Notes under the pieces: generated by a model
Told to the model about the DNA's origin: nothing
The model's input: the letters and a program-made list of their open reading frames with translations, nothing else
Database searches by the model: none
In this document: in pieces, positions 16,565 through 25,475 of the stretch
Layout of the letters: the number at the start of each line of letters is the position of its first letter
Position numbering within the stretch: the stretch's first letter is position 1
DNA from: Salpingoeca rosetta
Lineage: Eukaryota; Protista; Choanoflagellata
Assembly: GCA_033442325.1 (NCBI GenBank)
Contig: JAWQFM010000009.1
Span: 795,653 to 838,885 of the forward strand
DNA: 43,233 nt
Reading direction: 5' to 3'
Translations under genes and position numbers: made by a program

Positions 16565-17282
16565 ACCGCACTACCGTAGTCAACCTCCAACAAAATCTGT
16601 GTGTGTCTGTGTGTGTGTGTCTGTCTGTCTGTCTGTGTGTGTGACTGTTGTGGACAACGATGGCTGTGCTATTGCTCTGCTTGTTGTTGGGTTGTGCCAC
16701 TTGCTTGTGTTCATACACGCCATTTAGCAACACAGTTCGCTCCATGTCTCAGCTTGCACTGCCCCTCTCCCTCCCTCCCTCTCCCTCTTGCACAAGCACA
16801 TTTTTCCGTGTGCGCGTGCCTGTTTGTGTGAGTGTGGGGACTGCTTTAATCACATAAACAACCCGCCATGCGCGTGCGTGCGTGTGTGCGTGCGTGTGTG
16901 CGGGACGCGCCAGACTGGATGCTGCCCATCATGTGATGTGGACAACATGACATGCAAGCACGCAAGCCTTTGCACAGCTGCACAGACACAGGCACAGCAT
17001 TGCGGTGAGGAGAAAAGCCCCTCGGGACTGTGAACCAAACAACCGATCACATGCACACATATGGCAAGCACAAAAAAAAAAAGAGGTTTAACTCAAGGAG
17101 AGAGAATGGTAGTAAGGCAGCGACAAACGGGGGGAGAGGGGGGGGAAGCAGAGTACAGGAACGAGCAAACAGCATGTTCGTAAACCGACACACAGCTGGG
17201 CTGAGACGACAAAGAGCAACGGTACACGAGATGCATCACATTGAGACACACGAAGGCGGGAACACGGACACAGACGCAGTGC

Positions 17283-17351
17283 TCATTCCTCCTCGTCATC
17301 GCCCTGTACACGAGAACAGAGAGCAGTGGACCGTACACAGGCGTGAGTGCG

Positions 17352-17436
<85 letters not shown>

Positions 17437-17526
17437 ATGCGGTGGAGGGCTTGGTGTCCACGTGTGTCCATGTGTATCTCAGTGTGTTTGTGTGCGACTG
17501 CGTGGGTCAGTGCATGTGCCTGCTGA

Positions 17527-17586
<60 letters not shown>

Positions 17587-19124
17587 CTCTTCATGGCGTG
17601 CTGTGGTACATACCAGGATGCAAGCCTCAAAGTCCTCGAAGCTCACCTAGAAGACAGACAAAATGCACGTGCGAGCGAATGAATGAGCGATTGGAAAAAC
17701 GACAGGACCATGAACACACGAACGGGGTGAACGCACACCGCTGTCATGCATGTGCATGCACGCGTCTGCTTGTGCCGCCACTTACAGCGCCGTTGCCAGA
17801 CTTGTCAATGGTCTTGATCATCTCATCAAGGTCCTGCGACGAAGAAACACGGCGAAAGCATGTGTGAGACGTCAACCGCAAGCCCAAACTCAACAGACAA
17901 CCACAATAGACAAGCTCAACAGCGACAGCGACGACCACTGTCGTGAAACTGCCACACTACAGTCACAAAACGCCTTCGCCCGCCGTCCTTTCAGGTGCAC
18001 TTGAAACCAAGTGACAAAACAAAAATGGCAGGCCAGTCCCGTGCAATGGTTGGATTACCTTCTCCTCGTACTTCTCGCCCAGCCTGTCCATCATAACCTT
18101 GAGCTCTGCCCGTGAGATTTGACCACTGAGAATGACAGCACACAAGCAAACGACGACGTAACACAAAAGGATGGAGGTTGTGAGTGGTGGGACGTGGCTG
18201 CTTGACGAAAATTGCTGTTGTTGGGTGCGGGAACGTGACGGACAATGAATGCACGCACGCGCCGCACATGCAACGACAGAGCACTCGTTCTTCTTGAGGT
18301 TCAGGGTGCGTTGAATGGACGCTGTCGGCACGCACCTTCCGCTCGAGTTGAAGATGCTGAAGGTCTCCTTGACCTCGCGTGCTGTGTCAGTGCCGTGCTT
18401 GGACATCATCTTCATGAACTCGGCAAAGTCGACAGCGTTCTTGCCTGTTGTGTGTGTGCGTGTGGGGGGGGGGAGGGCGAGCATCATGTGAATGTGTGGG
18501 TGACTGGCTGTTTTCATGGGTGACTGGCTGTTTTCATGTGGAAGGGTCTCATTTGCAGGTCATATGTGTGTGTGTGTGTGTGTGTTGTGTACCTGAGCCG
18601 TCGACCTCTGTGATCATGTTCTTCAGCTCATCGTCAGATGGGTCAAGACCAACAGCACTGTTGGGTAGTTTGGGTGTTAATTGTTGGTGTTGTTGGTGTT
18701 GTTGGTGTAGTTGGTGTTGTTGGTGTTGTTGGGTGTTGTTGGCCATAACAGAGGTGAGCCAGTTGTGAAGCGTAGAGTAGCCCACACACAGGATGAAAGT
18801 AGCGAACCACACACACACACGCACACACACCCCACAACGCACACACACACGTAGGCATAGGCGCATGTGGCTCACGACGCGGGCAACGAACCAAACGAAC
18901 CAATAAACACACACAACTCACAATTCAACACAAAAACTCAACCCACAACTCCACACACACACAACGCAACACACAACACACAACTCAACACACAACTCAA
19001 CACACACAAACACGCACCGCATGACGCGGCCGAGGCTCTCGACGTCGATGACAGACTGGTTCTTGTGGTCAAAGAGGGCAAAGGCCTCCTTGAAGTTCTC
19101 GACCATCTGCATGGAGTACGCCAT
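17283..19124 (-). CDS. Divergent calmodulin-like four-EF-hand protein (7 exons)
   Basis: [36 protein letters not shown]|[21 protein letters not shown]|[14 protein letters not shown]...[11 protein letters not shown]|[22 protein letters not shown]|[16 protein letters not shown]|[11 protein letters not shown]|GDDEEE*. Confidence 0.9.
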
Positions 19125-19414: not shown

Positions 19415-19420
19415 TATAAA
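19415..19420 (+). promoter_or_regulatory. TATA box of the U6 gene
   Basis: TATAAA ~28 nt upstream of the predicted U6 +1 G (19443), the typical Pol III TATA position. Confidence 0.7.
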
Positions 19421-19513
19421 GGCCAATGTAACAAACGCTAGCGTCCCCCCTTCGGGGGTGGACTCATACTAAAATTGGACAGATACAGAGAAGATTAGCA
19501 TGGCCCCTGCGCA

Positions 19514-19578
19514 ACAAAAGCTGAAAGTGTCTGGTTCGATGCCCCCTCGAGCTAGTTACTTGCAGACTTTGCCGCATG
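19514..19578 (+). other. 65-nt hairpin insertion in the U6 ISL; candidate tRNA-type (BHB/BHL) intron
   Basis: Ends ACAA...CATG, not GT-AG. Helix TGCG(19508-11)/CGCA(19573-76) with 3-nt bulges CAA and TGA. Removal restores CCCCTGCGCAAGGATGAC. Confidence 0.75.
19533..19543 (+). promoter_or_regulatory. Pol III B-box inside the U6 insertion
   Basis: GGTTCGATGCC matches the consensus GGTTCGANNCC. Confidence 0.7.
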
Positions 19579-19616
19579 AGGATGACACGCGAAACCCTGT
19601 GAAGCGTATGTTCAAC

Positions 19617-19630
19617 TTTTTTTTTTTTTT
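19617..19630 (+). terminator. Pol III oligo-T terminator of U6
   Basis: T14 run immediately after the U6 3' stem. Confidence 0.85.
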
Positions 19631-19869
19631 GTGGTTTTGCTGTGTCGTGTGTGGTTGTTGTGTGTCTTTGTGCGTGTGTGTGTGTGTGGGTGCATGCTTA
19701 CAGCGTTTGTACCTGCTCTCAGGCTCTCTTCCTTCCTTGTTTTTTTTGTTTGTGTAATTTAACCACTGCGTTAGTGCGTTCATGCGTGTATTCGTGTATG
19801 AAGCTATCAGAGCTATCAGAGTATCAACTCACAAGACCCACACGACCCAGCGGGCGGGGGGGGGGGTAA

Positions 19870-25475
<5,606 letters not shown>

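What the first reader, a model, noticed from the sequence alone, without database searches (positions are those of the whole stretch)
19443..19630. U6 snRNA interrupted by a candidate tRNA-type (bulge-helix-bulge) intron in its catalytic stem-loop
Seen in sequence: an otherwise intact U6 gene (TATA, 5' UUCG hairpin, ACAGAGA, AGC, T-terminator) has 65 extra nt in the ISL loop. Neither possible junction register (ACAA..CATG or CAAA..ATGA) is GT-AG, GC-AG or AT-AC, so this is not a spliceosomal intron like those in some fungal U6 genes (e.g. S. pombe). The junction instead folds as an outer helix CC(19506-07)/GG(19580-81), a 3-nt bulge UGA(19577-79), a 4-bp helix UGCG(19508-11)/CGCA(19573-76), and a 3-nt bulge CAA(19512-14) opposite one unpaired C, followed by the intron stem. 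Established: tRNA splicing endonucleases (archaeal EndA, eukaryotic TSEN) cut BHB/BHL motifs after the second nt of each 3-nt bulge, and these bulges typically end in A. Applying that rule (CA^A, UG^A) and ligating gives CCCCUGCGCA+AGGAUGAC, exactly canonical U6. Inference: U6 maturation here depends on TSEN plus RtcB-type ligation, which would couple spliceosome biogenesis to the tRNA-splicing pathway. I know of no description of this, but could not search.
Basis: partly seen in the sequence, partly recalled or inferred. Interest (0 to 1): 0.96.

Follow-up and report, generated by a model that had tools for sequence, protein, structure and literature searches.

The report
U6 snRNA gene with tRNA-type intron
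The only U6 spliceosomal RNA gene in this 55-Mb eukaryotic genome is split by a 65-base insert that looks like a transfer-RNA-type intron rather than a spliceosomal one, so making the spliceosome's catalytic RNA here probably depends on the tRNA-splicing enzymes; no RNA data could be obtained to prove it.

Summary
Window 19443-19630 holds a complete Pol III U6 gene: TATA, 5' hairpin, ACAGAGA, AGC and a T14 terminator. Its ISL loop carries 65 extra bases (19514-19578). It is the only U6 in the assembly, and the insert is present in DNA runs from at least 9 studies.

The insert has no GT-AG, GC-AG or AT-AC ends in either register, and it is not a repeat. At the junctions it folds as helix, 4-bp helix (4/4 Watson-Crick, pair probability 0.82-0.96), and 3-nt bulges CA^A and UG^A. 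Cutting there restores canonical U6. Shuffled inserts give this geometry in 0.015-0.34% of trials.

The insert sits mid-way in U4/U6 stem II, which argues for removal. The genome encodes Sen2/Sen34-type domains, a Sen54-like domain and RtcB. Its tRNA-Ser(GCU) genes carry inserts of the same geometry in the T-loop (59/60), which is in-genome precedent for cutting outside position 37/38. The insert also carries a B-box, as the S. pombe U6 intron does.

Not shown: splicing itself. The scan had already noted this same stretch twice (s1-432374, s1-432544).

Verdict: probably a tRNA-type intron in U6 (about 0.6). I found no published description.

The parts
19415..19420 (+). TATA box (TATAAA), 23-28 nt upstream of the U6 start
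   Evidence: Read directly from the sequence.
19443..19513 (+). U6 exon 1: 5' UUCG hairpin 19443-19463, ACAGAGA 19485-19491, AGC 19497-19499, ISL 5' strand and loop
   Evidence: Rfam RF00026, 56.6 bits, model positions 1-68; fold.
19508..19511 (+). Central helix H, exon strand (UGCG); equivalent to tRNA loop positions 32-35
   Evidence: Pairs with 19573-19576 at probabilities 0.82-0.96.
19512..19514 (+). 5' bulge CA^A; proposed cut after 19513
   Evidence: Unpaired probabilities 0.68-0.87; tRNA-frame comparison.
19514..19578 (+). 65-nt insert (candidate BHB intron); a long irregular hairpin with no run of 4 or more T
   Evidence: Its 3' 60 nt are unique in the genome.
19515..19518 (+). Helix h', 5' strand (CAAA), pairing with 19568-19571
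   Evidence: Pair probabilities 0.51-0.63.
19533..19543 (+). B-box match GGTTCGATGCC (consensus GGTTCGANNCC), at +91 from the start, in the apical hairpin 19531-19555
   Evidence: It is the only match in the 43-kb window. The expected number in the insert is 4e-4. It has the same form as the B-boxes of this genome's tRNA genes.
19573..19576 (+). Central helix H, intron strand (CGCA)
19577..19579 (+). 3' bulge UG^A; proposed cut after 19578
   Evidence: U19577 is unpaired at 0.99 and A19579 at 0.91. G19578 is unpaired at only 0.27 because of the competing C19507-G19578 pair.
19579..19620 (+). U6 exon 2: ISL 3' strand and U6 3' domain
   Evidence: Read from the sequence. It occurs once in the genome. 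Its first 5 nt pair with U4 nt 1-5.
19617..19630 (+). Pol III terminator, a run of 14 T
   Evidence: Read from the sequence.

Best explanation
This is the organism's single, functional U6 snRNA gene. Pol III transcribes it from a TATA box together with a B-box that lies inside a 65-nt insert in the ISL loop. In the precursor, the ISL stem plays the part of a tRNA anticodon stem, and the 7-nt loop (UGCGCA|A) carries the insert between loop nucleotides 6 and 7, which is the equivalent of tRNA position 37/38. Four loop nucleotides pair with the last part of the insert to form the 4-bp central helix of a bulge-helix-bulge motif. The tRNA-splicing endonuclease (Sen2/Sen34 with Sen54) cuts after the second nucleotide of each 3-nt bulge (CA^A and UG^A). 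An RtcB-type ligase then joins the halves to give canonical U6 of about 113 nt, releasing a 65-nt linear or circular intron. Shown here: the gene anatomy, single-copy status, the fold, the B-box, the presence of the enzymes, and parallel inserts in tRNA-Ser(GCU). Inferred: transcription of this locus, removal of the insert, the cut positions, and which enzymes act.
For: (1) It is the only U6. The Rfam scan of the 55.4-Mb assembly and pattern searches for each half (up to 3 mismatches) each find one locus. Both halves are intact, with TATA and terminator.
(2) The insert is real DNA. Runs from at least 9 studies hold 0.80-0.95 of the words of 19520-19920, and four runs hold all sampled words of the gene.
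(3) There are no spliceosomal ends in either register. By contrast, a metagenomic U6 (L005/L007/L009) has a textbook GTAAGT..ACTAAC..CAG intron 2 nt away.
(4) Junction geometry. H is 4/4 Watson-Crick with probabilities 0.82-0.96, h' is 4 bp, the bulges are CA^A and UG^A, and joining restores U6 exactly. Only 0.015-0.34% of shuffled inserts reproduce this.
(5) In tRNA coordinates, the insert matches or exceeds this genome's own 37/38 introns in Lys-UUU, Ile-UAU and Ser-UGA: nt 37 is A, nt 38 is A, and nt 32 pairs with intron position -3.
(6) Removal is functionally expected. The genome's single U4 (85 bits) pairs its nt 1-12 without a break to spliced U6, 7 bp on exon 1 and 5 bp on exon 2, so the insert would sit mid-way in U4/U6 stem II.
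(7) The machinery is present: two tRNA_int_endo genes, a Sen54-type domain and RtcB.
(8) In-genome precedent. Two full-length tRNA-Ser(GCU) genes carry 53/56-nt inserts between T-loop nt 59 and 60, with the same geometry (7-nt loop, insert at 6|7, H 4/4, 3' bulge UG^U). Removing the insert gives a perfect tRNA-Ser(gct), and no uninterrupted copy was found.
(9) The B-box in the insert explains why it is kept. S. pombe likewise keeps its U6 B block in an intron (PMC5855946).
Against: No orthologous U6 was found, so helix covariation is untested. Eukaryal endonucleases normally place their cuts by measuring from the tRNA body, and purified S. pombe enzyme barely cleaves a mini-BHB (PMC3400036, PMC8707768, PMC3728597). 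U6 has no such body, and this genome's enzyme looks standard, with a Sen54-like domain present. The 5' bulge faces one unpaired C, so the motif is not the strict hBHBh' form. The shuffle statistics are post hoc. The tRNA-Ser(GCU) precedent is itself supported only by sequence.
Confidence: 0.6

Rival explanations
1. The insert is never removed. Mature U6 is about 178 nt and carries a long hairpin that extends the ISL loop, serving only as DNA-level housing for the B-box.
For: The insert sits in a hairpin loop and folds as a self-contained hairpin, so the ISL stem and the catalytic bulge could still form. The B-box alone explains retention at the DNA level. There is no evidence of splicing.
Against: It would interrupt the 12-bp U4/U6 stem II in the middle, in one of the most conserved RNA stretches known. 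A retained expansion has no need for a 4/4 helix between loop nucleotides and the insert's 3' end, with 3-nt bulges placed exactly at both boundaries (0.015-0.34% by chance). The 2018 U6 review I read (PMC5855946) describes no U6 with an ISL-loop expansion.
Confidence: 0.15
2. The insert is removed by some other route: the spliceosome using non-canonical splice sites, or an unknown endonuclease plus ligase (an IRE1-like mechanism, for example).
For: All U6 introns described so far are spliceosomal (PMC5855946). A metagenomic U6 has a spliceosomal intron 2 nt away.
Against: There is no GT/GC/AT start, no AG/AC end, and no branch-site or polypyrimidine signal at the boundaries in either register. 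Internal GT..AG pairs would leave 26 or more nt in the loop and give an intron of about 39 nt. The junctions are not in the paired 7-nt CNG|NNGN loops that IRE1 uses (that consensus is from my own knowledge). The structure present is the one the tRNA endonuclease recognises.
Confidence: 0.1
3. The precursor is cut at the bulges but not ligated, and U6 works as two pieces held together by the ISL stem and by U4 or U2 pairing.
For: The same cleavage logic applies as in the main model. Fragmented structural RNAs exist in some protists (my own knowledge).
Against: The ISL stem is short and irregular. RtcB is present. No split U6 has been described, and the U4 pairing favours a continuous strand.
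Confidence: 0.05
4. The locus is a dead or silent copy, and the working U6 lies in unassembled sequence.
For: Assemblies can miss small genes. The Rfam scan scored only 48 of 2063 first-look candidates.
Against: Exact-pattern searches allowing 3 mismatches find each half only once. Both halves, the TATA box, the B-box and the terminator are intact, and the 3' exon shows no decay. The assembly has only 68 contigs.
Confidence: 0.05

Closest known systems
S. pombe U6 gene intron (Tani & Ohshima 1989; Frendewey et al. 1990; reviewed in PMC5855946)
   Same: It is a single-copy U6 gene interrupted near the catalytic core, and the intron carries the Pol III B block, so a promoter element sits inside the gene and is later removed from the RNA.
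   Different: The S. pombe intron, like all fungal U6 introns, is of mRNA type, with canonical 5' splice site, branch site and 3' splice site, and is removed by the spliceosome. This insert has none of those signals and instead has a bulge-helix-bulge at its ends. It is also in a different position (the ISL loop rather than next to AGC).
Archaeal BHB introns in non-tRNA genes (rRNA, Cbf5 mRNA) and in tRNAs at non-canonical positions (PMC3978253, PMC8707768)
   Same: Two 3-nt bulges flank a 4-bp helix; recognition is by structure, independent of the host RNA; an endonuclease cuts and a ligase joins.
   Different: Those cases are archaeal, and the enzymes (EndA) are known to act without a tRNA body. 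Here the host is a eukaryotic nuclear gene and the enzyme would be the eukaryal heterotetramer.
Ectopic tRNA introns and permuted tRNA genes of Cyanidioschyzon merolae and green algae (PMC3728597, PMC3978253)
   Same: A eukaryotic nuclear endonuclease processes BHB motifs away from 37/38, including at 59/60. This genome shows the same kind of 59/60 insert in tRNA-Ser(GCU).
   Different: All those substrates are tRNAs. A spliceosomal snRNA substrate has not been reported.
HAC1/XBP1 unconventional splicing (IRE1 plus Trl1/RtcB)
   Same: A non-spliceosomal endonuclease-plus-ligase pathway acts on a non-tRNA, and RtcB is the ligase in animals.
   Different: IRE1 cuts in two 7-nt stem-loops with a sequence consensus, in the cytoplasm, on an mRNA. 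That motif is absent here.
Metazoan tRNA intronic circular RNAs (tricRNAs; PMC4536317, PMC6614914)
   Same: TSEN plus RtcB can turn an excised, structured intron into a stable circle. A 65-nt hairpin intron would be a candidate.
   Different: tricRNAs come from tRNA genes. Circularisation here is untested.

Membership tests
U6 spliceosomal snRNA (Rfam RF00026) | Score above the gathering threshold for the covariance model | tested here: met
   56.6 bits against a threshold of 44, E 9.4e-12, but only for model positions 1-68 because the insert breaks the match.
U6 spliceosomal snRNA (Rfam RF00026) | ACAGAGA box, AGC triad, ISL, conserved 3' domain, terminal U tract | tested here: met
   All are present at the coordinates listed under parts. 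The 3' domain resumes at 19579 and occurs once in the genome.
U6 spliceosomal snRNA (Rfam RF00026) | Base-pairing with the cognate U4 (stem II) across the ISL loop region | tested here: met
   U4 nt 1-12 pair without a break to the spliced sequence (-26.5 kcal/mol). The unspliced form gives -20.3 and a shorter helix.
tRNA-type (bulge-helix-bulge) intron | Central 4-bp helix H | tested here: met
   19508-11 pairs with 19573-76, 4/4 Watson-Crick, probabilities 0.82-0.96.
tRNA-type (bulge-helix-bulge) intron | Two 3-nt bulges on opposite strands flanking H, with exon-intron boundaries after the second bulge nucleotide | tested here: met
   The bulges are CA^A (19512-14) and UG^A (19577-79), and joining the cut ends restores U6. 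Caveats: the 5' bulge faces one unpaired C, and G19578 has a competing pair.
tRNA-type (bulge-helix-bulge) intron | Flanking helices h and h' of at least 2 bp (definition in PMC3978253) | tested here: inconclusive
   h' has 4 bp (probabilities 0.5-0.63). h is the ISL stem, with 2 Watson-Crick pairs followed by a C.A mismatch, and its register is ambiguous (0.15 for the BHB register).
tRNA-type (bulge-helix-bulge) intron | Splicing endonuclease and a compatible ligase encoded by the organism | tested here: met
   PF01974 twice (63.5 and 49.8 bits), PF12928 at 32 bits, and PF01139 (RtcB) across 7 exon-wise matches.
tRNA-type (bulge-helix-bulge) intron | Actual cleavage at the bulges, leaving 2',3'-cyclic phosphate and 5'-OH ends, followed by ligation in vivo | not testable with these tools
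No RNA holder was found.
tRNA-type (bulge-helix-bulge) intron | Conservation or covariation of the motif in orthologues | tested here: inconclusive
   No orthologous interrupted U6 was found in metagenome, genome or viral contigs. Those collections hold few relatives of this organism.
Spliceosomal (mRNA-type) U6 intron, as in fungi | GT-AG (or GC-AG, AT-AC) boundaries plus a branch site | tested here: not met
   The two registers read ACAA..CATG and CAAA..ATGA. Compare L005/L007/L009, which have GTAAGT..ACTAAC..CAG.
TFIIIC-dependent Pol III gene with an internal B-box | B-box consensus GGTTCGANNCC downstream of the start; TATA box; T-run terminator; no T4 run inside | tested here: met
   B-box at 19533-43 (expected number 4e-4; the only one in the window), TATA at 19415-20, T14 at 19617-30, longest T run in the insert is 3. 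The A-box was not assessed, and transcription was not tested.

The most novel reading that the evidence does not exclude
In this lineage the catalytic RNA of the spliceosome is itself matured by the tRNA-splicing pathway. A bulge-helix-bulge intron in the U6 ISL loop, which also houses the gene's Pol III B-box, is cut out by the Sen2/Sen34 endonuclease working without a tRNA body, and the halves are joined by RtcB. This would be the first BHB intron in a eukaryotic nuclear non-tRNA gene. Together with the T-loop inserts in tRNA-Ser(GCU), it would show that this organism's endonuclease works in an archaeal-like mode guided by structure alone.
Probability: 0.55. Interest if true: 0.9.

Novelty: new variant of a known kind. 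Interest (0 to 1): 0.82.

Why it matters
U6 introns have been used as evidence that the spliceosome's active site can reverse-splice into its own RNA, and every described case is spliceosomal and fungal. A tRNA-type intron in U6 would show a second, independent way for U6 to acquire and tolerate an intron. It would make pre-mRNA splicing depend on the tRNA-splicing enzymes. It would also extend the substrate range of a eukaryal tRNA endonuclease to an RNA with no tRNA body, a question so far addressed mainly with artificial mini-substrates. Finally, it offers a natural example of an intron kept because it carries a Pol III promoter element. All of this can be tested directly with one RT-PCR and one northern blot in a culturable organism.

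Tried and rejected
Later work on those bases was local folding and alignment only.

(2) Run searches. Runs X1-X3 hold all the U6 words, including those of the insert, but X1 and X3 also hold the untranscribed flank. They are genomic DNA and say nothing about RNA.

(3) Orthologues. A metagenome pattern scan for U6 with a 21-81-nt insert at this site gave 6 contigs: a spliceosomal-intron U6 (three contigs), a tandem partial copy, and two U6-like fragments lacking ACAGAGA. None is BHB-like. A pattern of B-box plus exon-2 start returned only bacterial chance hits in genome contigs and nothing in viral contigs.

(4) Mobile-element origin. The insert's 3' 60 nt are unique in the genome.

(5) A general habit of B-box inserts in Pol III genes. 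SRP RNA and RNase P RNA match their models end to end.

(6) ARAGORN without the intron option missed the intron-bearing tRNAs, and with the option it misplaced the boundaries. I reset them by hand to 37/38.

(7) Literature. Seven searches found no paper describing a BHB or tRNA-type intron in any snRNA.

(8) I did not confirm the organism's identity.

Full report
**What is there.** Window 19443-19630 (+) is a U6 snRNA gene. Rfam RF00026 matches 19443-19514 at 56.6 bits (gathering score 44), covering model positions 1-68 of 105, and the match ends abruptly. The sequence shows:
- TATAAA at 19415-19420;
- the 5' UUCG hairpin at 19443-19463;
- ACAGAGA at 19485-19491 and AGC at 19497-19499;
- the ISL 5' strand and loop up to 19513/14;
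- 65 unrelated bases;
- the rest of U6 from 19579/80, ending in a T14 run at 19617-19630.

Because an A flanks both sides, the insert is either 19514-19578 or 19515-19579.

**It is the only U6, and the insert is real.** An Rfam scan of the whole 55.4-Mb, 68-contig assembly finds one U6 locus. Pattern searches for a 29-nt exon-1 core and a 28-nt exon-2 stretch, each allowing 3 mismatches, also find one place each. DNA runs from at least 9 studies hold 0.80-0.95 of the sampled words of 19520-19920, and four runs hold all sampled words of the gene. The insert is therefore not an assembly artefact. Its 3' 60 nt are unique in the genome, so it is not a repeat or mobile element.

**It is not a spliceosomal intron.** The two registers read ACAA..CATG and CAAA..ATGA, so there is no GT-AG, GC-AG or AT-AC. 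A metagenome scan for U6 genes interrupted at this site returned a useful contrast. Contigs L005, L007 and L009 carry a U6 with a textbook GTAAGT..ACTAAC..CAG intron two bases downstream. This is the kind of intron known from fungi (review PMC5855946). The present insert looks nothing like it.

**Junction structure.**
- Both MFE and centroid folds place the 4-bp helix 19508-11/19573-76, the helix 19515-18/19568-71, and a long hairpin beyond.
- In the partition function, the central helix has pair probabilities of 0.82-0.96 and h' has 0.51-0.63. The bulge nucleotides are mostly unpaired: 19512-14 at 0.68-0.87, U19577 at 0.99 and A19579 at 0.91.
- The weak point is the outer helix. The CCCC run allows alternative registers.
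- The 5' bulge faces one unpaired C (19572). By the definitions in PMC3978253 the motif is therefore near-strict rather than strict hBHBh'.
- With the exons held fixed and the insert shuffled 200,000 times, the geometry recurs in 0.015% of shuffles (Watson-Crick H plus a 4-bp h') to 0.34% (GU allowed, 3-bp h'). These figures are post hoc but small.

**The tRNA analogy is exact.** Treat the ISL stem as an anticodon stem. The loop then has 7 nt, and the insert lies between loop nucleotides 6 and 7, the equivalent of tRNA 37/38. "Position 32" pairs with intron position -3, and "37" and "38" are both A.

I compared this with three intron-bearing tRNA genes of the same genome: Lys-UUU (31 nt), Ile-UAU (32 nt) and Ser-UGA (21 nt). 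All have the intron at 37/38 with nt 37 = A and nt 38 = A. H is 4/4 in two of them (mostly GU pairs) and 2/4 in the third, and h' is 2-4 bp. The U6 insert is more canonical than any of them. That is what one would expect of a substrate that cannot rely on a tRNA body.

**Why the insert probably has to come out.** The genome has one U4 gene (85.2 bits, full model). Its first 12 nt pair without a break to the spliced U6 sequence, 7 bp on the exon-1 side of the junction and 5 bp on the exon-2 side (-26.5 kcal/mol). With the insert present, only a shorter helix forms (-20.3). This helix is U4/U6 stem II, a universal feature of U4/U6 (established knowledge). A retained 65-nt hairpin would sit in its middle.

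**Machinery.** The genome has two tRNA_int_endo catalytic-domain genes (63.5 and 49.8 bits), a Sen54-type N-terminal domain (32 bits), and RtcB. The endonuclease therefore looks like an ordinary eukaryal one.

**In-genome precedent.** Earlier unchecked notes of this scan pointed to tRNA-Ser(GCT) genes with T-loop introns, and I tested this.
- C9:1700949-1701083 and C34:503067-503204 are full-length tRNA-Ser(GCU) genes with 53- and 56-nt inserts between T-loop positions 59 and 60.
- Removing the insert gives a perfect 82-nt tRNA-Ser(gct) according to ARAGORN.
- The geometry matches U6: a 7-nt loop with the insert at 6|7, H of 4/4 (UUCG with CGAA), and a 3' bulge of UG^U. The 5' site lies in a loop (the BHL form).
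- The only other Ser-like hits are Ser(AGA), and two further long tRNAs are Arg(CCT) and Leu(TAG). No uninterrupted Ser(GCU) was found. The limits are that the tRNA scan scored only 63 of 498 candidates and that BLAST was sensitive down to roughly 83% identity.

If AGY codons are to be read, these inserts must be removed at a position the canonical ruler cannot reach. That in turn implies BHB/BHL-guided cutting in this organism, as reported for C. merolae (PMC3728597). A permuted tRNA-Thr noted by the scan (s1-434342) would point the same way, but I could not locate it.

**Why the insert is there.** It carries GGTTCGATGCC at 19533-43, a match to the B-box consensus GGTTCGANNCC. This is the only match in the 43-kb window, and the expected number in the insert is 4e-4. 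It has the same form as the B-boxes of this genome's tRNA genes. It lies at +91 from the start, and the insert contains no T4 run. S. pombe likewise keeps its U6 B block inside an intron (PMC5855946). SRP RNA and RNase P RNA genes here are uninterrupted.

**What is not shown.**
- The apparent "RNA?" holders turned out to hold the flank too, so they are DNA.
- No orthologue was found, so covariation is untested.
- The literature gives a real objection. Eukaryal endonucleases normally measure from the mature tRNA domain, and purified S. pombe enzyme barely cuts a mini-BHB (PMC8707768). Against that, at least one eukaryal enzyme processes archaeal-type substrates (PMC3400036).

**Novelty.** Seven full-text searches found no description of a BHB or tRNA-type intron in an snRNA. 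The 2018 U6 review knows only spliceosomal U6 introns in fungi. BHB introns outside tRNA are described only for archaea (PMC3978253).

**Verdict.** The interpretation passes every sequence-level test available but lacks the decisive RNA test. My probabilities are:
- about 0.6 for removal by the tRNA endonuclease followed by ligation;
- 0.15 for a retained loop expansion;
- 0.1 for another removal route;
- 0.05 for a two-piece U6;
- 0.05 for a silent copy.

It is a new variant of known kinds (BHB introns; U6 introns that carry B-boxes) and of high interest.

Noticed in passing
G000:C9:1700949-1701083 (-) = L081:1501-1635; G000:C34:503067-503204 (-) = L082:1501-1638: Two full-length tRNA-Ser(GCU) genes carry a 53/56-nt insert between T-loop positions 59 and 60 (BHL form: H is UUCG with CGAA, 3' bulge UG^U). 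The 5' part of the insert differs between the copies while the 3' 41 nt are nearly identical. The first insert bases complete a B-box across the exon-insert boundary.
   Followed up: yes
L083:1478-1612 (+), L085:1478-1615 (+), L084:1501-1637 (-): Three further copies of the tRNA-Ser(GCU) unit lack tRNA positions 1-23, with unrelated sequence upstream, but keep the anticodon arm, the T-loop insert, the 3' exon and a T-run. Two lie in tandem on C18, and one lies about 70 nt from the full copy on C9. They could be truncated pseudogenes or parts of a split arrangement.
   Followed up: partly
L005:168-268, L007:5375-5475, L009:2785-2885 (metagenome contigs): An unidentified eukaryote in marine metagenomes has a U6 gene with a classic spliceosomal intron (GTAAGT..ACTAAC..CAG, about 76 nt) in the ISL, two bases downstream of the site studied here. 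This type is known from fungi. The organism was not identified.
   Followed up: no
L006:625-692, L008:659-725 (metagenome contigs Ga0126342): U6-like fragments have the AGC-ISL region duplicated and interrupted by about 35 nt, and lack ACAGAGA upstream. They are probably rearranged pseudogenes or part of a repeat.
   Followed up: no
L055, L063, L065, L069, L071, L079 (one Eubacteriales MAG), L066: A bacterial repeat of about 130 nt contains a tRNA-3'-end-like GGTTCGACTCC followed by a hairpin. It is found at or near the ends of six contigs of one MAG. It is unrelated to U6 and was hit by chance.
   Followed up: no
window 21434-22285 (-): An ORF gives weak SNF2-related and RING/U-box hits, both below the Pfam cut-offs. 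It is probably one exon of a Rad5/HLTF-like gene, the nearest recognisable coding neighbour of U6.
   Followed up: no
window 16596-19009 and 20012-22420: The U6 gene sits in a roughly 1-kb island free of tandem repeats, between dense GT/AC-type microsatellite arrays.
   Followed up: no
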